Virus record (IMG/VR): IMGVR_UViG_3300032322_002561
Coordinates: 62,001 to 126,000 of that record
Length of the DNA stretch: 64,000 bases
Strand: one strand, 5' to 3'
Position 1 is the stretch's first letter, and the number at the start of each line of letters is the position of its first letter. A model generated the notes under the pieces. The model ran no database searches. It saw only the letters and a program-made list of their open reading frames with translations, and was not told where the DNA came from. Positions 28,328-63,344 of the stretch are shown here, in pieces. The translations under genes and the position numbers were made by a program.

Positions 28328-28402
28328 GCTTGAGATTTCCTTTTAAAAGAATGCTGGGTGATCACCCAACAAGTTATTTAGTGGTTTTCACTGATGGCCA
28401 AC

Positions 28403-28430
28403 AAAAAAGCGACATTTCTGCCGCTTTTTT
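28403..28430. terminator. Intrinsic terminator after the tmRNA
   Basis: AAAAAAGCGACA-TTTC-TGCCGCTTTTTT. Confidence 0.75.
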
Positions 28431-28790
28431 GACTATTTTGGGTAACAAGGCATAGTTGCCCCGGAGATCATGCCGCTAAGGCAAAGACCTCGTCGTTGGC
28501 TGCGTTTGCAGTTATCGTTGTGCTTCTACAACCGGGTGTCCCCAGTCCTAACGGGTTTCGCATTCCCGTGTAGATCCTGTCCATACTTGTTGCCACGTCG
28601 AAACTGTGTCATCCCCACCAAAAAGACCTAGCAATTCTGGATCAATGTGCCAGCTCCAGCTCATGCTGTAATTCCACAAATTCAAGGGTGGAAAACTATC
28701 GGTCCATTGCTCCATAAAAGTCCTTTTGGTGGAGATGCCGGGTTCTGCCCCCGGGTCCGCAACACCTTTCTGTCAAGGCATTAAACTACA
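28431..28790 (-). ncRNA. ssrA: Circularly permuted (two-piece) tmRNA
   Basis: Acceptor piece ending CATCTCC-A-CCA (3' end at 28727) precedes the GGGGATG 5' end (28616); G3:U70 pair; tag ANAANDEVFALAA-stop at 28509..28468; outer ends approximate. Confidence 0.92.
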
Positions 28791-28798
28791 ATTCTTTT

Positions 28799-28828
28799 AT
28801 TGTACTACAAAAAATATTTATTGGTCAA
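28799..28828 (-). promoter_or_regulatory. Promoter for the tmRNA
   Basis: TTGACC-N18-TACAAT with TAAATA in the spacer. Confidence 0.65.
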
Positions 28829-56307: not shown

Positions 56308-57246
56308 TTATTTGGCCATAATTTTGGCCAAAGTTTGCCCGCCTCGCAGACTGTGGATTTCCCCAGGACGTTGCAGTTCAATCCAGGCCACGTTGCCAGC
56401 ACCTCTATAACGATCGTTGATTTCAAACCCCAGTTGCTCGGCATGTGCCACAATTTGTCGGCCTGGTGTATAGGTCATGAAACTGCTTTCGGCCAAGGCC
56501 ACACCATGTTCATAGTCACAATCGTTTATGGTCATAAACACTACACCTCCCGGTCTAAGTTTGTACCAAAACTCCACAAGATATTGTTTGATTACTTCCA
56601 TGGGTTTGAAATTAAAATAGTTGTAGGCAAACACATAGCCAAATTGTGCGTCTGGCAATGCCGATAAAAAAGGTTGTGGCATCTGCTCGTTCACAGTATA
56701 CAGACGCAATCTGCGCTGATATTCAGGAGTAAATTTTGACACTGCTGGTTGCAACAGGTCTAAGTTTTGATCAACCACGTACAAAGGATCCAAGGGCACC
56801 AACTGTTCAATAAAGTTTTCCTGTGCAGGTCTAAATATCAAACCTGGCAATCTCCAGTCGGTGTAACGCACAATACGTCCCTGCAACCGCTCGGCACTTT
56901 CATTGTCCAAGTGCAGTTTGCGATTCAAAATATATTCATTGGTTTCGTAACACATTTCTTCCTGATACAACCTAAGACTTTCTTGCAGATAGATTGGCTC
57001 CAATGCAGATATTTTGTGTTCTAGTTCCTGTTTGATTTGATCCAAGGTTTGCTGAAAAGAATCAAATGCTCGATCAATGTTGTGTCCATCTTTGATGAGT
57101 TGATCACTTTGTGTTTGCAATTGCGATCTGTGATTTATCACTTGGTGTATCATGCCGTCAAGACGATGTCGAGCTGTGTAATGAATGTCACGCAGACTAA
57201 AACTGTCTAAGAGATTTTTATATTCAATAAGATCGCTTAGTGTCAT
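56308..57246 (-). CDS. Coiled-coil plus methyltransferase-like protein
   Basis: C-terminal QFGYVFAYNYF ... KLRPGGV. Confidence 0.6.
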   Translation of the reverse strand: MTLSDLIEYKNLLDSFSLRDIHYTARHRLDGMIHQVINHRSQLQTQSDQLIKDGHNIDRAFDSFQQTLDQIKQELEHKISALEPIYLQESLRLYQEEMCYETNEYILNRKLHLDNESAERLQGRIVRYTDWRLPGLIFRPAQENFIEQLVPLDPLYVVDQNLDLLQPAVSKFTPEYQRRLRLYTVNEQMPQPFLSALPDAQFGYVFAYNYFNFKPMEVIKQYLVEFWYKLRPGGVVFMTINDCDYEHGVALAESSFMTYTPGRQIVAHAEQLGFEINDRYRGAGNVAWIELQRPGEIHSLRGGQTLAKIMAK

Positions 57247-59903
57247 GAAAAATCAAACAGGCTTTGAAAAGTTGTTTCTGTGTTGGTGGCAGCGCTCAGG
57301 TCCCAACCCAGCACGCCCAGCAAGTTGTCAATCTTTTGATCTACCACGGTCTGTTCCATTTCTGCATCGTCAAACGGCAGTTCTTTGAACCAGGCCGGCA
57401 GGTTAATTTCATCTGTGGGATAACCAATCGAAGTCCAACCCAAGGGATTGCTCTTTAACTTGCATACGATAGTTTTCATGCCATCTACAATCTGCATGCT
57501 ATACTTGTCTGAGTTCATCCTGCGCAGGTTGTTCCAGTTCATGGCCGCACGCACATGTCCAGGCATGTTGGCTTTGCCCAGGCGTTCTTCTTCGCGTGCA
57601 TACTTGGTCAAGTTGTTTACACGCTTGGGTGACCCTTTTTCCCAGCCCGGTCTGTCCTTGAACTGATACTTGAATTCACGAATTTTTTCTACTACCTGTT
57701 CACGTGTTTTTCCTGTGAGTACGTCGTTGAGGATTTCGCTCAAGAAGTCTTGGATGACCTTGGGTGTGTCACTACGCTTCAAATCCAGGCCCATGGCCTT
57801 GACCCGACCTGGCTCGCCATGTGTGTCCACACGCTTGTTCTCTTTGTCATAGTACATGACAGCATAACGCTTCTTGGTGATAAACAAGCCTTTTGATGCT
57901 ACAATTTCGCGACCGCCCTTGATGACTGACCCCATGTCTCTGGGGCAGTGAAATGCCTGTTCCATGAATCCTGGAAAACTTTCATTGACCTGATCAGCAA
58001 TACTGTTGTACAGTTGCACAGCCATGTCACGATTCCAGGTCATGTTGCCAGCCTCAATCTCTGATTTCAATGCTGGATAGGCCGAAAAATAACACGAGTC
58101 TGTGTCACCATAGATAATGGCTTCACCCACATGATCATATGATCCTGTAATACATTCGTTGACGTAAGCATCCATGTGGCGTGCAATGGCACGACCTGTC
58201 AAGGTAGTTGATTGACCAATGCGTTTGTCAAAGAATCTGCAACCTGGATTCAGGATAGCACCATACAGGCTGTTCAAGTTAATCTTCTTGACCAACTGAC
58301 GCTTGTCCCAGTATTCTTCATCCTCGGGCGTGGTCGATTCTTTGAGCCGGGCCTGCATTTCTTTGCGTTCAGCATACCAACGTTTCAACAATCCTGGGAT
58401 AACCGCTTCGCGTTCATATGTAAAGATAGTGCCATTGGCCGTGATCATCCAGGGTTGATTGCTATCAAAAATCATCTTCCATACTTCGGCAGCACTGTGT
58501 ACACTTTCTTCTCCGTCCTGCCAGTCAATGGTGATCTCTGTGCCTCGCTGTTGTTCCATCACAGCAGTATACTCTAAACTGCCAAACAGTCCTTCCCAGG
58601 CAGCCGCAAAACTGCTACCACTGCGAATCTTTTCGCTAATGTAGCGTTCGGTCATCACAGGGCGCAGTTGTCCCACAATGGTCTCGGGTCCCATGTTAAG
58701 TGCTCGAATGGCACTGGGATATAGACTGTTGATGTCTATTGATCCCACGTATTCATGTATGCCCTTGCGTGGATAGGCCACATAAGCACCAGCGGCCTGT
58801 GTGTCCTCATCCGAATAACGTTCTTTGCGATTGGGCACTACCAGCCCACGTTCGTGTGCTTCGTTGATGATGGCCTGTTCGGTCACAGCCACAGCACCCA
58901 TGGTGGTCTGTAGCAACACTGTGTTCTCATGTGCCAGGGTATTGGCCAAGTCCAAGAATTTCAGCTTCTTGTCCAACTGTGCAAGTCCGTTGACGTCTTG
59001 TCGGTTATACTCGATAAAGCGTTTGAAGTTCTGATTGTATAACTGATCTAGTGTGCCTTCGAACTTGGTCTTGCCTTCAAGTCCTTCGTATTCAAGAATA
59101 GCATCCAAGCTGTAACTATGCCGCTCTTCGTATGTGTACTTGCGATACAGTTGCATATAGTCCATGTGTACACGACCAATCAAGTCATAGGTTTGACTCT
59201 CATGGCCAAAACGTTCAAAGGTCCTGCCCTTGGGATATTGATTCCACAGGCAGAATCTGCGTGTGTCATCTTTGCTGAGTACTCGGGTCACACGATTTAC
59301 TGTGTAAGGGATATCATAGCCCTCCGAATTCCAACCTGACACGGCATCGGCATCTTCTATGAGATCCAGAAATGTGTTCAGCATGTCTTCCTCACGCTCA
59401 AACAACAAGGTGTCCTCAAACTCGGCACAAATTTCTTGCGCAGTTTCCCAGCTCATGTGCTTGGGTGGTACCACAAGCGTGATCAATCTATCCACCCAAC
59501 CTAGATAAACACTTATGGCTGTGATGGGATTGAATGGATCTTCGGGTGGACTGAATCCACGGTCACTGTCAAAGTCTACTTCGATGTCAAAGAACGCAAC
59601 ATTTAGTCTAGGAGCATCTTGTCCTTTGTAGTTTTCTTCCAAGCAACGGAATATGGGATTGATATCTGACTCATACAGTTGCTTGCCGCTCTGTATGCGA
59701 ATCTCTTTGCGGAACTCTTTGTTGTTGCGTGTGCTGAACCTTGACACCGGAGTGCCATAGATTGATGTAAATTTACCGCGGGGATCATCATAATAGAACA
59801 CATAGTTAGCAGCATATTCTTGATAGCGTCGTTCGCCATCCTTGCGTTCAACTACATGTATGCGATCGTGTTCACGATCAAAAAGTGCGTCTACATAACT
59901 CAA
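57243..59903 (-). CDS. Family B DNA polymerase (T4 gp43-like)
   Basis: Exo DIEVD, GWNSEGYDIPY; Pol DINSLYPS, KINLNSLYG, YGDTDS, KKRY; TTG start. Confidence 0.97.
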   Translation of the reverse strand: MSYVDALFDREHDRIHVVERKDGERRYQEYAANYVFYYDDPRGKFTSIYGTPVSRFSTRNNKEFRKEIRIQSGKQLYESDINPIFRCLEENYKGQDAPRLNVAFFDIEVDFDSDRGFSPPEDPFNPITAISVYLGWVDRLITLVVPPKHMSWETAQEICAEFEDTLLFEREEDMLNTFLDLIEDADAVSGWNSEGYDIPYTVNRVTRVLSKDDTRRFCLWNQYPKGRTFERFGHESQTYDLIGRVHMDYMQLYRKYTYEERHSYSLDAILEYEGLEGKTKFEGTLDQLYNQNFKRFIEYNRQDVNGLAQLDKKLKFLDLANTLAHENTVLLQTTMGAVAVTEQAIINEAHERGLVVPNRKERYSDEDTQAAGAYVAYPRKGIHEYVGSIDINSLYPSAIRALNMGPETIVGQLRPVMTERYISEKIRSGSSFAAAWEGLFGSLEYTAVMEQQRGTEITIDWQDGEESVHSAAEVWKMIFDSNQPWMITANGTIFTYEREAVIPGLLKRWYAERKEMQARLKESTTPEDEEYWDKRQLVKKINLNSLYGAILNPGCRFFDKRIGQSTTLTGRAIARHMDAYVNECITGSYDHVGEAIIYGDTDSCYFSAYPALKSEIEAGNMTWNRDMAVQLYNSIADQVNESFPGFMEQAFHCPRDMGSVIKGGREIVASKGLFITKKRYAVMYYDKENKRVDTHGEPGRVKAMGLDLKRSDTPKVIQDFLSEILNDVLTGKTREQVVEKIREFKYQFKDRPGWEKGSPKRVNNLTKYAREEERLGKANMPGHVRAAMNWNNLRRMNSDKYSMQIVDGMKTIVCKLKSNPLGWTSIGYPTDEINLPAWFKELPFDDAEMEQTVVDQKIDNLLGVLGWDLSAATNTETTFQSLFDFS

Positions 59904-59909
59904 ATTTTT

Positions 59910-59975
59910 CTCCAGTTATGGCTGGTCTGCCATGATTCATGTTGCTTACGGCAACGACTCGCTGTTGTAAAACAG
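59910..59975 (-). promoter_or_regulatory. Structured leader of the polymerase gene (putative translational operator)
   Basis: Two hairpins plus an H-type pseudoknot that includes the RBS. Confidence 0.5.
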
Positions 59976-59978
59976 TAC

Positions 59979-60239
59979 TTATAAGGTTTTGCCTACCGTG
60001 GTAAGAATTGTTTCTAAAAGTTCGTGATCTTGTTGTTCTTGACCAAAGCTGGCTTTATGTGCTAGACGAATGGCTTTTTTTAAAATACTGGGTTTGATTT
60101 CTAATTCTTCGGCCACGGCTTTGATAGTGTCACTCAAGCCCTCGTTTAAGGTTTCAACCTCGTGCATGACCTGCATGCCTTCGTTGATGATCTGTGTGAG
60201 TTTGAGTTTTTGTTCAGCTGAAAAAGTTTTGGTGTCCAT
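59979..60239 (-). CDS. Small DNA-binding protein, T4 DsbA/GapR-like
   Basis: 86 aa helical; IKAVAEELEIKPSILKKAIRLAHK. Confidence 0.55.
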   Translation of the reverse strand: MDTKTFSAEQKLKLTQIINEGMQVMHEVETLNEGLSDTIKAVAEELEIKPSILKKAIRLAHKASFGQEQQDHELLETILTTVGKTL

Positions 60240-60295
60240 GTTTTCTCCTGGTAATGTCTTATTATAAACAAAATTATTTAGAAGTCAATGATATT

Positions 60296-60385
60296 GCTCA
60301 CTTTTGGCAAACTGGGTAGCGAATCCGTTTGTCAGGCCAGCAGCCGGCCACACACTGCGGTAACAAGTACCGGTCCTAAGGTGTG
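60296..60385 (-). ncRNA. Unassigned structured RNA candidate
   Basis: Three stems plus a 3' pseudoknot. Confidence 0.5.
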
Positions 60386-60660
60386 TTCTTTTTCTTTGGA
60401 GCGGCGCCCAGCGCCTGTTGTATTCTTTTTTCTAGAGCAGCACGCTCACCGGCAGTTGGAGCCCCTGCTGGAGCAGCCGGCGCCACTTGTGAAACATCAA
60501 CTGTGGGTGTATCTGTTTTGGTCACCGCCGGGGTTGTCACAGTCTGCGGATATTTGGCTCGAAGTTCGGCCTTGGTGTACAACTTGCCTGTTTCAGGATT
60601 GGTCACCGAAGAATAGGTTGAAGTTGCTCCTGTTGTTTCAAACAATTCAGACAGCAACAT
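60376..60660 (-). CDS. Hypothetical low-complexity protein (possible virion internal protein)
   Basis: MLLSELFE N-terminus; Thr/Ala/Pro-rich. Confidence 0.6.
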   Translation of the reverse strand: MLLSELFETTGATSTYSSVTNPETGKLYTKAELRAKYPQTVTTPAVTKTDTPTVDVSQVAPAAPAGAPTAGERAALEKRIQQALGAAPKKKNTP

Positions 60661-60661
60661 A

Positions 60662-61357
60662 TCAACGTTCTTCTATGTAGTCTTGACTTTGATCTTGTCG
60701 TTTTTGACGTGCTTGATATAATTTTACAGCCATGTCAGCTTGGTCAAGATCTTGGAAACGTGTTGGTAAGCGTTTGTCACCACGACGCAGTTCAAATCCA
60801 TCACGTTCGTTACCCCAACATTCCACACACGAACCATCCTCCATGGTATATGATTTAATGCATGCACCTTCGGGCAAAGTGGGATTGATCACAGGTGCAG
60901 GGACAGGTTCGGCTATGTCACCTACTTCTGTGGTGGTGGGATCTTCACTAACATCCTCTTCCTCGTGATGTTTTTGTTGGCCAGCCTTGGCAGGATTTTC
61001 GTCTTCAATTTCATCCTTGGCTTTGTCTTTGAGATCTTTGTCAACTCGGATCTTTTGTTCTAGTTTGTCTAGATAAGTGGTCAGGTCTTTTTTGACCTTG
61101 CTGAGCATGTCTTCTTCTACTTCTTGCATGGCTTCAGCCAATGCACTTTCGCTAGTGCCCACAGCCATGCCCTTCATGGGGTGTTGGGGATCAGTTTTGG
61201 CGCCTAGAGCATGTATGGTTTTGGGGCGAAACAAAGCTGGCAATTGTTTGGCATCTTTTTGCTGTGGGTCAAGACCCTTGCCCTTGGGAGAGACTGGCAC
61301 TAGCTTGCGTTCAATGGCGTCTAATCGTTCTAAGATATCGTGTATGTTGTTGCTCAT
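60662..61357 (-). CDS. Hypothetical acidic protein
   Basis: 231 aa. Confidence 0.7.
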   Translation of the reverse strand: MSNNIHDILERLDAIERKLVPVSPKGKGLDPQQKDAKQLPALFRPKTIHALGAKTDPQHPMKGMAVGTSESALAEAMQEVEEDMLSKVKKDLTTYLDKLEQKIRVDKDLKDKAKDEIEDENPAKAGQQKHHEEEDVSEDPTTTEVGDIAEPVPAPVINPTLPEGACIKSYTMEDGSCVECWGNERDGFELRRGDKRLPTRFQDLDQADMAVKLYQARQKRQDQSQDYIEER

Positions 61358-61797
61358 GCTCTAGCGTCTTTCAAAAATGATCTCAACATCCAACGATGTT
61401 TGCCCATGGCGTCAATACGCCCGGCTAAGAAGTCCATGAGACCTTGTTGGTTTTCTTGTTCTGCTGATTCAAATGTCTGATTCAACAGTACAATCATTTT
61501 TTCGCTATCTGAGTATAGCTCCTCGATCATCAATCGAGCACGTGGGACCTTGGTCTGTCCCTGAATCTGGCTGAGTTCGCCGAATCGTTCAAAACTGCCT
61601 GGTGTGTAATCGTCTAGAATACGAATAAATTCTGCTGTTTGATCTATGCTGTTTTCATAAACTTCTTCATAGATTTTACCAAAAAATTTGTGCAACTGCG
61701 CAAAGTCTGGACCTTCAACATTCCAATGAAAGAACTGTGCTTTCACTACAAAAGCATACTGTGTTGCCAGCAATGTTTTCAAGTCATCGACTACCAC
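61354..61797 (-). CDS. dps: Dps/ferritin-like DNA protection protein
   Basis: FHWNVEGPDFAQLH, D..AE.IR, K..WML. Confidence 0.92.
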   Translation of the reverse strand: MVVDDLKTLLATQYAFVVKAQFFHWNVEGPDFAQLHKFFGKIYEEVYENSIDQTAEFIRILDDYTPGSFERFGELSQIQGQTKVPRARLMIEELYSDSEKMIVLLNQTFESAEQENQQGLMDFLAGRIDAMGKHRWMLRSFLKDARA

Positions 61798-62253: not shown

Positions 62254-62291
62254 AAACCTATTTATCATAATCTTAGCCTATAAATATGGCT

Positions 62292-63344
62292 ATGTTAAAG
62301 CTGGCTGATATACGTCGAGTACACGTAGAACTTACAACTCGTTGCAATGCTCGCTGTCCCATGTGTCCTAGAAACTATCGAGGATTTGATTATAATTCTG
62401 GATATCCTATAACCGAATTGAGTCTTGCACAATTCAGACACATTTTCCCCGCTAGTTTTCTTGAACAGTTGAGACCGCCACCGTTTCCCAACGATGGGTT
62501 CGCGCACAAACACATGAAATTTTACGGTGTATTGTTCAACGGGAATCTAGGCGATTTTGCATTGGCCAAAGATGGTGTAGAAATCGTGGAATATCTAGTC
62601 AGTCACGGAGTTCCGGTCAAAATCAGCACCAATGGCAGCATGCGATCTAGATCCTGGTGGAGTCGCCTGGCTCTACCAGATGTCACAATTGGATTTGCCT
62701 TGGATGGCTTGGCAGACACGCACAATTTGTATAGACAGGACACTAACTGGCACACAGTCATTGACAATGCCATGGGTTTTATTGGCGCCGGTGGCCAAGC
62801 CATATGGCGCTTTATTCCTTTTGAACACAACCAACATCAAGAACAACAATGTAAAGAACTAGCCAAAGAACTAGGCTTTGCAAAATTTGACAACATAGGT
62901 GACGGTCGCAACAATTCTCCGGTGTTTACTAGAACTGGAGAATACAGTCATCAAATTGGACATGATCCTAGACCTGCAAATCATGTGCCCAATGTTCACG
63001 TCTTGCTGGACAATCATAAGTCTTGGTTCAATCATCGCACTATTCGAATTGAAAAAGACGAACCCAATCTGCGACTCATATGCGAGCACAAGCGACAAGA
63101 AGAAATATACGTGGCCGCAGACGGCAGTGTGTATCCTTGTTGTTTTTTAGGATACTATCCAGCCACTATGAATCACCCCGGTAACGAGCAGTTGAAAGAA
63201 ATGGTACATGAAAATAATGCCTTGCAATATGATTTGGCACACTGCATGAACTGGTTTGAAAAAATTGAACAATCATGGAAACAGGCCAGCATAGCTGAGG
63301 GAAGATTATATCAGTGTGTGAACACTTGTGGAGGACGATCTTGA
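62292..63344 (+). CDS. Radical SAM/SPASM-twitch domain protein
   Basis: [17 protein letters not shown]...[11 protein letters not shown]. Confidence 0.88.

What the first reader, a model, noticed from the sequence alone, without database searches (positions are those of the whole stretch)
60296..60385. Compact multi-stem pseudoknotted RNA overlapping a stop codon
Seen (minus strand): CACAC/GTGTG encloses CTTAGGAC and CGGTA/TACCG; then a GGCC-GGCTGCT-GGCC hairpin; then TGACAAAC/GTTTGCCA, whose loop TTCGCT can pair with downstream AGTGAG. The TAG of ORF 60376-60660 lies in the first internal loop, and the frame stays open for 25 more codons. Inference: an unknown ncRNA, ribozyme, 3' element or readthrough signal at the boundary with the replication genes.
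Basis: partly seen in the sequence, partly recalled or inferred. Interest (0 to 1): 0.6.

Follow-up and report, generated by a model that had tools for sequence, protein, structure and literature searches.

The report
Conserved phage RNA antisense to rRNA
A folded RNA of about 95 bases, lying just upstream of the DNA-replication genes of an uncultured freshwater giant phage, belongs to a large phage RNA family absent from Rfam, and its unchanging loops are exact complements of a universally conserved stretch of bacterial 23S ribosomal RNA, so it may act by pairing with host ribosomal RNA.

Summary
On its own the fold is no better than shuffled sequence (z +0.47). Comparison with relatives settles it. 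The element (window 60296-60385, minus strand) is one copy of a family found in at least 160 related viral contigs. It occurs once per locus, always on the gene strand, and nearly always upstream of an 86-aa gene and the family-B DNA polymerase. P1, P1a, P2 and P3 all covary. Rfam 15 has no match, and three cultured relatives lack the element.

The TAG lies inside an invariant loop. It is the upstream ORF's stop in only 40 of 158 copies, and the in-frame extension after it is usually 2-3 codons. Readthrough is therefore rejected.

The key finding concerns the two invariant loops. CCUUAGGACCG and UUCGCUACC are exact reverse complements of adjacent 23S rRNA segments 1920-1930 and 1929-1937 (base of helix 69, I-CeuI site). 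The best reading is a new phage antisense RNA aimed at host 23S rRNA. The family and fold are solid; the mechanism is inferred and no expression data exist.

The parts
60381..60385 (-). P1, 5' strand (CACAC)
   Evidence: Pairs with 60351-60355. P1 of at least 4 bp is present in 111 of 124 main-class copies, against a mean of 40 after shuffling. There are 32 distinct helix sequences, e.g. ACTC/GAGT, ACCCTT/GAGGGT, ATTTGG/CCGAAT. See also helix 1.
60371..60381 (-). L1: invariant block CCUUAGGACCG, containing the TAG (60376-60378) that ends ORF 60376-60660. Exact reverse complement of E. coli 23S rRNA 1920-1930.
   Evidence: 49-52 of 54 distinct copies are identical at each position, in loci found through the neighbouring protein rather than through this sequence. 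The 11-nt antisense match to 23S position 1920 is.
60358..60372 (-). P1a: optional hairpin CGGUA-CUUGU-UACCG inside P1
   Evidence: There are 20 distinct hairpins of at least 4 bp (CGCA/TGCG, CGTAAC/GTTACG, GTGGTAG/CTACCAC and others), and it is absent in the short class. GUU is conserved in 51 of 55 distinct versions, against 13.9 expected. UUGUUAC at 60360-60366 matches 6 of 7 antisense to 23S 1910-1916 (my pairing); as a group, the P1a regions rank the window 23S 1906-1919 in the top 0.5% of rRNA windows.
60351..60355 (-). P1, 3' strand (GUGUG)
60335..60349 (-). P2 hairpin GGCC-GGCUGCU-GGCC. The loop 60339-60345 forms the pseudoknot.
   Evidence: 98.6-100% of cells are paired, and GC/CG swaps are seen at 3-4 of the 4 pairs.
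60305..60334 (-). P3 hairpin carrying loop L3 (AUUCGCUAC, 60316-60324). UUCGCUACC (60315-60323) is the exact reverse complement of 23S rRNA 1929-1937.
   Evidence: All 10 P3 pairs change on both sides. CGCUAC is identical in 52-54 of 54 copies.
60296..60302 (-). 3' tail AGUGAGC, the pseudoknot partner of the P2 loop
   Evidence: Helix 3 is 93% paired, with 4 of 6 pairs changed on both sides. The pseudoknot was not part of the model used for the alignment, so it was not fitted to it. Matched loop/tail pairs in relatives are listed.
60261..60288 (-). Sigma-70-type promoter TTGACT-16-TATAAT for the downstream p86 / polymerase unit, starting 7 nt after the element
   Evidence: 11 of 12 consensus matches. 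A similar promoter starts 24-40 nt after L3 in 47 of 158 copies, against 3.4% of control windows.
59979..60239 (-). 86-aa gene (p86; phrog_12534 / phrog_639, small DNA-binding or regulator-like protein), the conserved downstream neighbour
   Evidence: Found downstream on the same strand in 156 of 157 loci where it is present.
57243..59903 (-). Family-B (T4 gp43-like) DNA polymerase
60376..60660 (-). 94-aa ORF that runs into L1 and ends at its TAG. Not conserved.
   Evidence: No Pfam or PHROG hit. No tblastn match at E below 1e-5 in any of 189 related loci.

Best explanation
The element is one copy of a previously undescribed family of phage non-coding RNAs. It is about 90-100 nt long and is transcribed on the gene strand, in the gap between an upstream transcription unit and the promoter of the p86 / DNA polymerase unit.

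The fold is three adjacent helices: P1 (with an optional inner hairpin P1a), P2 and P3. An H-type pseudoknot between the P2 loop and the 3' tail locks them together. This scaffold holds out two invariant single-stranded loops, each with a U-turn-type YUNR start (CUUA and UUCG).

- Shown: the family, the fold, the strand, the synteny, and the exact complementarity of the loops to adjacent 23S rRNA segments 1920-1930 and 1929-1937. This is the 3' strand of helix 69 and the junction towards helix 70. In long-form members the P1a hairpin adds a weaker match to the helix 69 loop.
- Inferred: the RNA acts in trans as a two-loop (kissing-type) antisense RNA against host 23S rRNA. It would pair with the domain IV segment while that segment is unfolded or flexible, in nascent rRNA, late 50S assembly intermediates or free 50S subunits. 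This would either tie large subunits to the phage transcript or disable them.

Which of those two outcomes applies is open.
For: Family and fold:
- The R1 model scores the window copy at 64.4 bits, E 3e-17, and it is the only copy in the 236-kb record.
- 63 of 80 protein-anchored loci and 97 of 100 pattern loci have exactly one hit each. All 63 hits in the loci oriented by the p86 gene lie on the gene strand.
- Covariation is documented.
- G.U pairs outnumber A.C by 106 to 46 overall, and by 29 to 1 in the seven pairs RNAalifold predicted (P2 and the inner part of P3). This fixes the strand.
- Minimal variants end in a U-run on the same strand.

Loops:
- L1 and the CGCUAC core of L3 are close to invariant, while every stem around them has been rewritten. 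This holds across at least five scaffold classes: long, short, cis-masked, terminator-type, and one with no pseudoknot.

Target:
- E. coli rrlH carries CGGTCCTAAGGTAGCGAA at 1920-1937.
- L1 has an 11-nt and L3 a 9-nt exact antisense match there. These are the best duplex sites for each loop in all of 16S plus 23S: -20.3 kcal/mol (about 6.7 sd below the mean over all sites, my calculation) and -14.4 kcal/mol (about 4.7 sd).
- Shuffled loops give an adjacent 9+7-nt match in only 254 of 1,000,000 trials.
- This 23S stretch is nearly universal in bacteria (PMC2790883).
- The positions that vary in L3 (AUU, AAU, AAC, ACU) lie 5' of the U-turn. The rare C-to-U change at its last base keeps a G.U pair with G1930.
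- In one subclass L1 is paired in cis with CCUAAGG, the same heptamer as 23S 1924-1930.
- There is no alternative target in the phage's own genome.
- A synthetic antisense PNA against helix 69 inhibits E. coli growth (PMC7038079).
Against: - No RNA-seq run holds this phage, so transcription, RNA ends and abundance are unknown.
- In mature 50S subunits, 1920-1924 is paired within helix 69 and the rest is structured. Pairing would need an unfolded or immature target (from my own knowledge).
- The two blocks are in permuted order: the 5' loop pairs with the 5' part of the target. They therefore cannot form one continuous duplex.
- Part of L1 (its first C and the final CCG) is used in P1 and P1a. 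In the cis-masked subclass L1 is fully paired.
- Only 6-7 nt of L3 are truly invariant.
- A whole-element cofold scan was not specific: the 23S 1896-1935 window ranked second of 874.
- The complementarity was noticed after the fact.
- The benefit to a lytic phage is not obvious.
Confidence: 0.4

Rival explanations
1. A cis-acting end-of-operon element. The compact knot marks and protects the 3' end of the upstream transcripts, by termination, insulation of the next promoter, or blocking 3'-to-5' exonucleases. On this view the invariant loops are a protein-binding site and their match to 23S rRNA is incidental.
For: - The element sits 0-25 nt after the upstream stop codon in about 80% of copies.
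- A promoter follows almost at once in 47 of 158 copies, against 3.4% of controls.
- In minimal variants (L099, L161, L146, L090) P3 is followed by a U-run, which makes it a classical intrinsic terminator.
- The immediate upstream neighbour varies.
Against: - The window copy and the main class have no U-run; the tail is AAAGUGAGCA. No terminator is called there.
- A stability or terminator role does not explain 16-20 invariant loop bases.
- It also does not explain why those bases are complementary to adjacent 23S segments: about 2.5e-4 on the lenient shuffle test, and much lower for the full 11+9 nt by my estimate.
Confidence: 0.25
2. A self-cleaving ribozyme or RNase processing signal that cuts polycistronic transcripts between the upstream genes and the replication genes.
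For: The size, the pseudoknot, the roughly 20 invariant bases in loops and junctions, and the intergenic same-strand position in a phage all resemble small ribozyme classes (from my own knowledge). The flanks are A/U-rich.
Against: No known ribozyme family reaches even E = 10. The conserved bases are in hairpin loops rather than in a helical junction core. Scaffold classes that lack P2 and the pseudoknot still keep the loops. No cleavage data exist.
Confidence: 0.08
3. A ligand- or factor-sensing leader that controls read-through transcription or translation of the downstream p86 / DNA polymerase genes.
For: Linkage to p86 and polB downstream is strong, while the upstream gene varies. The pseudoknotted fold has conserved unpaired bases.
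Against: A strong promoter lies between the element and p86, so the main p86 transcript would lack it. In many relatives 1-5 kb of other genes are inserted between the element and p86. There is no expression platform overlapping an RBS or a terminator in the main class.
Confidence: 0.07
4. A stop-codon readthrough or recoding signal for ORF 60376-60660.
For: The TAG lies inside the structure and the frame is open for 25 more codons.
Against: - The TAG is the ORF's stop in only 40 of 158 copies.
- The extension is 2-3 codons in 20 of those 40.
- An open run of 25 codons has about 0.30 probability by chance.
- The 94-aa ORF itself is not conserved.
- TAG is an ordinary stop in this genome, and no suppressor tRNA is encoded.
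Confidence: 0.01

Closest known systems
Kissing-loop antisense RNAs of plasmids and bacteria (CopA/CopT, RNA I/RNA II, and OxyS-fhlA with its two loop contacts)
   Same: Short structured RNA. The recognition bases are displayed in hairpin loops that begin with a YUNR U-turn motif. Two separate loops contact one target. The stems are free to vary while the loops are fixed.
   Different: The target here would be ribosomal RNA rather than an mRNA or a replication primer. The RNA is phage-encoded, embedded between genes, and knotted by a pseudoknot. No pairing has been demonstrated. The comparison rests on my own knowledge of these systems.
Exon-binding sites EBS2/EBS1 of group II introns
   Same: Two separate loops pair with two adjacent target segments in the same 'permuted' order: the 5' loop pairs with the 5' segment.
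   Different: The element has no intron domains and no catalytic core, and is only about 95 nt. The blocks are 7-11 nt rather than about 6 nt. This is an analogy of topology, not of family.
Ribosome-binding 3' elements of plant RNA viruses (T-shaped structure of turnip crinkle virus; BTE with 18S rRNA complementarity)
   Same: A viral structured RNA placed 3' of coding sequence, proposed to contact ribosomal subunits or rRNA.
   Different: Those act in eukaryotic hosts and RNA viruses, and have unrelated sequence and fold. Nothing comparable is described for phages in the papers I searched.
Synthetic antisense PNA against helix 69 of E. coli 23S rRNA (Kulik et al. 2017, cited in PMC7038079)
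   Same: Targets the same ribosomal neighbourhood by base pairing, and shows that such pairing can inhibit growth.
   Different: An artificial oligomer that is contiguous and not structured. Its exact target bases were not compared.
Retroviral (MuLV-type) stop-codon readthrough pseudoknot
   Same: An H-type pseudoknot lying close to a UAG.
   Different: The spacing to the stop is not fixed, the stop is usually a different upstream codon, and there is no conserved extended reading frame.

Membership tests
Any Rfam 15 family (4227 models) | Covariance-model score at or above the family's gathering threshold | tested here: not met
   Nothing is found at 60290-60390 at gathering thresholds. With E up to 10 on 59900-60800, only chance-level hits appear on other bases, the best being PyrD_leader at 21.9 bits against a 47-bit cut-off, over the promoter/RBS.
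H-type pseudoknot | Hairpin-loop bases pair with a single strand downstream, supported by compensatory changes | tested here: met
   P2 loop with the 3' tail: 93% paired, 4 of 6 pairs changed on both sides, and the helix was not fitted by the model. Matched loop/tail pairs include UCUCCCUG/CAGGGAGA, GCCCCGG/CUGGGGC and GGCUACU/AGUAGCC.
Programmed stop-codon readthrough signal | The stop codon is at a fixed short distance 5' of the structure in all members | tested here: not met
   The upstream ORF stops at the L1 TAG in 40 of 158 copies. Elsewhere it stops 9-87 nt upstream, or no upstream ORF is found.
Programmed stop-codon readthrough signal | A conserved extended reading frame beyond the stop | tested here: not met
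   The extension is 2-3 codons in 20 of 40 cases and otherwise varies from 6 to 36 codons, apart from two duplicate copies that stay open for 339 codons.
Intrinsic (Rho-independent) terminator | A G+C-rich hairpin followed directly by a U-run | tested here: not met
   None is called on the minus strand at the element. P3 is followed by AAAGUGAGCA. The feature is met only in minimal variants of the family, e.g. L099, L161 and L090.
Trans-acting antisense RNA with U-turn recognition loops | Conserved unpaired loops carrying YUNR, held by covarying stems | tested here: met
   L1 contains CUUA and L3 contains UUCG. The invariant bases lie 3' of the U. The stems covary.
Trans-acting antisense RNA with U-turn recognition loops | Loop complementarity to a defined target, beyond chance | tested here: met
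   11 nt and 9 nt of exact antisense to 23S 1920-1930 and 1929-1937. Shuffled loops pass a lenient adjacent 9+7-nt test in 254 of 1,000,000 trials.
Trans-acting antisense RNA with U-turn recognition loops | Expression as an RNA, and pairing with the target in cells | not testable with these tools
   No RNA run holds the sequence.
Known self-cleaving ribozyme classes (hammerhead, twister, twister-sister, pistol, hatchet, HDV-like, hairpin) | A match to the class model, and site-specific self-cleavage | tested here: not met
   No model match at E up to 10. Cleavage itself cannot be tested here.
T4 gene 43 translational operator (polymerase autoregulation) | A hairpin operator overlapping the ribosome-binding site of the polymerase gene | tested here: not met
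   The element ends at 60296. The polymerase gene starts at 59903, with a promoter and the whole p86 gene in between.

The most novel reading that the evidence does not exclude
This is a phage-encoded 'anti-helix-69' RNA. A knotted scaffold presents two or three loops that base-pair with the universally conserved 23S rRNA stretch 1910-1937. The P2 loop, CGGCUGCUG, is also a 9-nt exact complement of 16S rRNA 519-527 in the 530 loop, so it may contact the small subunit as well. On this reading the phage uses the RNA to capture, mark or inactivate host ribosomal subunits or their assembly intermediates. That would be the first natural phage RNA known to target ribosomal RNA by antisense pairing.
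Probability: 0.35. Interest if true: 0.9.

Novelty: categorically new. Interest (0 to 1): 0.78.

Why it matters
Even without a mechanism, this is a well-supported new class of structured RNA. It has more than 150 distinct copies and compensatory changes in every helix. It is specific to a clade of uncultured freshwater giant phages and fixed next to their replication genes.

If the loops do pair with 23S rRNA, it would be a new way for a virus to act on the bacterial ribosome, using RNA against rRNA rather than a protein factor. The site it points to is helix 69 and its 3' flank. That region matters for subunit joining, termination and recycling, and synthetic antisense oligomers already exploit it.

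The hypothesis can be tested directly with a 95-nt transcript and E. coli ribosomes, because the proposed target sequence is identical in E. coli.

Tried and rejected
- Single-sequence thermodynamics: not significant.
- Rfam at gathering and at E up to 10: nothing.
- BLAST of the region and of the element against 50,697 phage records: nothing useful.
- The model against the nearest cultured relatives (Sinorhizobium phage Phosso, Agrobacterium phage Atu_ph07, Escherichia phage 121Q; polymerase 42-50% identical): no credible hit, best 15 bits.
- Pattern scan of 185,579 bacterial and archaeal genomes: 7 matches. From the printed sequence none has the family's stems and several look like coding sequence; one lies within sequence identical to the antisense strand of the 23S stretch seen. 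By my estimate about 30 matches are expected by chance in a collection of that size.
- A target inside the phage's own genome: none.
- TAG recoding or a suppressor tRNA: none.
- Whole-element cofold scan along 16S and 23S: not specific, because the program refolds the element and cannot model loop-to-strand kissing.
- P1a complementarity to the helix 69 loop: suggestive only. It is in the top 0.5% of windows, but three other rRNA sites score as well.
- tRNA-like, T-loop and anticodon-loop readings of L1 and L3: considered by eye and dropped, because the loop sizes and key positions do not fit.
- L1 self-dimerisation: CCUUAGG is a near-palindrome and the rare CCUAGG variant a perfect one. I kept this only as a minor possibility, since L3 has no such symmetry.
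- Public RNA sequencing: no run holds the phage.
- Four full-text paper searches found no description of such an RNA.

Full report
**Context.** The window is part of a 236-kb IMG/VR virus record estimated at 68% complete. It carries a T4 gp43-like family-B DNA polymerase at 57243-59903 (minus strand). Just upstream of that is an 86-aa gene, p86, at 59979-60239. The window also holds ten tRNA genes and a permuted tmRNA. The nearest cultured polymerases are those of Sinorhizobium phage Phosso (50% identity), Agrobacterium phage Atu_ph07 (46%) and the 121Q/CBB group of giant phages (about 42%). DNA sequencing runs sharing part of the sequence come from lake, freshwater, aquaculture, wastewater and estuary samples.

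**The observation.** On the minus strand the sequence reads CACAC-C-UUAGGAC-[CGGUA CUUGU UACCG]-CA-GUGUG-U-[GGCC GGCUGCU GGCC]-[UGACAAACGG AUUCGCUAC CC A GUUUGCCA]-AAA-AGUGAGC. It is followed after 7 nt by a near-consensus promoter, TTGACT-16-TATAAT, then an AGGAG ribosome-binding site and the p86 start. The TAG of ORF 60376-60660 lies in the UUAGGAC stretch, and 25 sense codons follow it in frame. So the description is accurate. As a single sequence, however, the fold is no more stable than shuffled versions (z +0.47). No Rfam family matches.

**Relatives.** I fetched 80 loci from viral contigs through the p86 protein and looked upstream of the gene. This showed a recurring motif. A covariance model (R1) built from 27 short-form copies finds:
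- one copy in the window (64.4 bits), and no other in the 236-kb record;
- one copy in 63 of the 80 protein-anchored loci, all on the gene strand;
- one copy in 97 of the first 100 pattern loci searched.

Of 189 loci with the motif, 157 have p86 nearby (156 of them downstream on the same strand) and 150 have the polymerase downstream. The median distance to p86 is 776 nt, and 68 copies lie within 250 nt of it. The gene immediately upstream varies. The window's 94-aa ORF has no homologue in any related locus. The three cultured relatives lack the element. The seven pattern matches in 185,579 prokaryote genomes are chance hits. This is therefore a single-copy, syntenic element of one clade of uncultured giant phages.

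**Structure.**
- In the short-form alignment, P2 is 100% paired with GC/CG swaps, and all ten P3 pairs change on both sides.
- In the 54 distinct copies from protein-anchored loci, 86.2% of cells are paired against 65.7% in shuffles. 22 of 24 pairs show double changes, no shuffle reaches the observed value, and sliding the partners drops pairing to 27-46%.
- P1 of at least 4 bp is present in 111 of 124 main-class copies, against about 40 after shuffling, with 32 different helix sequences. P1a is an optional hairpin with 20 different versions.
- The pseudoknot joins the P2 loop to the 3' tail. In the window, GCUGCU pairs with AGU(G)AGC. That helix was not part of the model, yet it is 93% paired with compensatory changes. 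In divergent subclasses both partners are replaced together: UCUCCCUG/CAGGGAGA, GCCCCGG/CUGGGGC, GGCUACU/AGUAGCC, GGGUGCU/GUGACC.
- G.U pairs far outnumber A.C, which places the RNA on the gene strand. Minimal variants end in a U-run on that strand.

**Readthrough.** Among 158 distinct copies, the upstream ORF ends at the motif's TAG in 40. In about half (80 copies) it ends 9-25 nt upstream, and in the rest it ends further away or no ORF is found. In 20 of those 40 the in-frame extension is only 2-3 codons. TAG closes 20 of 159 long open frames in this genome, and no suppressor tRNA is encoded. The TAG is conserved because it belongs to an invariant loop, not because it is a recoded stop.

**The loops.** In copies found through the neighbouring protein, so with no bias from the loop sequences themselves, two blocks are close to invariant. 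CCUUAGGAC is identical in 49-52 of 54 at each position, and (U)CGCUAC in 52-54 of 54. Every helix around them has been rewritten. The blocks also persist across scaffold classes that lack P1a, lack the pseudoknot, or turn P3 into a terminator.

A text search for the blocks returned papers on 23S rRNA and the I-CeuI homing site. I checked this on E. coli rrlH, which carries CGGTCCTAAGGTAGCGAA at 23S positions 1920-1937. L1 (CCUUAGGACCG) is the exact reverse complement of 1920-1930. L3 with its closing C (UUCGCUACC) is the exact reverse complement of 1929-1937. These are the best duplex sites for each loop anywhere in 16S and 23S. Shuffled loops give an adjacent 9+7-nt antisense match somewhere in the rRNAs in 254 of 1,000,000 trials. 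The observed 11+9 nt is far rarer. The stretch is nearly universal in bacterial 23S genes (PMC2790883).

Several details fit pairing:
- Both loops start with a YUNR U-turn signature (CUUA, UUCG), and the invariant bases are those 3' of the U.
- The variable L3 positions lie 5' of the U-turn.
- The rare C-to-U change at the last L3 base keeps a wobble pair with G1930.
- One subclass pairs L1 in cis with CCUAAGG, the same heptamer as 23S 1924-1930.
- Long-form P1a hairpins keep GUU(A/G)C in 39 of 55 versions and GUU in 51 of 55. This is complementary to the helix 69 loop just 5' of the L1 site, and that window ranks in the top 0.5% of rRNA windows, though not uniquely.
- The phage genome holds no alternative target.

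**Interpretation.** The family, fold, strand and synteny are shown. That the loops are complementary to 23S 1920-1937 is shown. That they act by pairing with host 23S rRNA is inferred. I consider it the most likely mechanism, at about 0.4, because no rival explains why two invariant loops should mirror adjacent parts of one of the most conserved rRNA stretches.

The geometry is that of two hairpin loops contacting neighbouring target segments, as in two-loop antisense RNAs, in the same permuted order as the group II intron EBS2/EBS1 sites.

The main difficulties are these. The target is structured in mature 50S, so pairing would need nascent rRNA, late assembly intermediates or a flexible helix 69 in free subunits. 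Part of L1 is used in P1 and P1a. There are no expression data. The advantage to the phage is unknown, whether it is tethering of 50S near the replication genes, interference with ribosome assembly or subunit joining, or marking rRNA for breakdown.

The chief rival is a cis-acting end-of-operon element for termination, insulation or stability. It fits the position right after stop codons and right before a promoter, and it fits the terminator-type variants. It leaves the loop sequences unexplained.

**Novelty.** There is no Rfam family, no hit in cultured phage genomes, and no description in the papers searched. I rate it as a new RNA class. The rRNA-antisense reading, if confirmed, has no described precedent in phages that I could find.

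Noticed in passing
window 60335-60349 (-), P2 hairpin: The nearly invariant C-GGCUGCU-G of P2 is a 9-nt exact reverse complement of E. coli 16S rRNA 519-527 (CAGCAGCCG, the 530-loop region). It is the best 16S/23S duplex site for that loop. A single 9-mer match has roughly 2% chance probability. Divergent subclasses replace this loop and its tail partner together, so this may be coincidence.
   Followed up: partly
window 28377-28819 (-), and tRNA genes between 20083 and 29481 (-): The phage carries a permuted (two-piece) tmRNA: Rfam tmRNA_permuted at 107.7 bits, ARAGORN tag peptide ANAANDEVFALAA. It also has tRNA genes (12 Rfam hits, 11 called by ARAGORN): Thr, Leu x2, Gly, Pro, Trp, Cys, Met x2, Glu, Ser. 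A phage-borne two-piece tmRNA, with a partial match to the alphaproteobacterial tmRNA model, hints at the host lineage.
   Followed up: no
L040, L046, L049, L086, L087, L147, L170, L177, L151, L023, L016 (motif region of each): In this subclass L1 (CCUUAGG) is paired in cis with a downstream CCUAAGG, replacing the usual P1. The masking heptamer is identical to 23S rRNA 1924-1930. The P2 loop and tail are also different here (GCCCCCA with CUGGGGGA).
   Followed up: partly
L099, L161, L146, L158, L090 (motif region of each): Minimal variants keep L1 and L3 but lack the pseudoknot. In most of them (L099, L161, L146, L090) P3 is followed directly by a run of U, making an ordinary intrinsic terminator whose loop is the conserved GAUUCGCUAC.
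   Followed up: partly
L002, L004, L013, L033, L039, L052: about 1.2-1.5 kb between the motif and p86: In these relatives a gene is inserted between the RNA and p86. Its product ends ...GPYK(S/P)D.YRY, which from memory resembles the C-terminus of S-adenosylhomocysteine hydrolase. I did not check this against a family library.
   Followed up: no
window 60376-60660 (-): The 94-aa ORF that runs into the element has no Pfam or PHROG hit and no tblastn match in 189 related loci. It may be a young or spurious ORF, and the plus-strand ORFs over the same bases (60288-60680, 60383-60616) are probably spurious too.
   Followed up: partly
window 61354-61797 (-) and 62286-63344 (+): A ferritin/Dps-like protein (PF00210, 70 bits) and a radical-SAM/SPASM-like protein lie just upstream of the element. 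The radical-SAM hits are below Pfam's cut-offs, with a phrog_21308 match at E 3.6e-18. The Dps-like gene is a frequent upstream neighbour in relatives: 43 loci, median 2.3 kb away.
   Followed up: no
L031:2093-2177: One relative carries a decayed copy (27.7 bits). L1 is degraded to ACUUUGG and a C is lost from L3. This suggests the element can be lost in some lineages.
   Followed up: no
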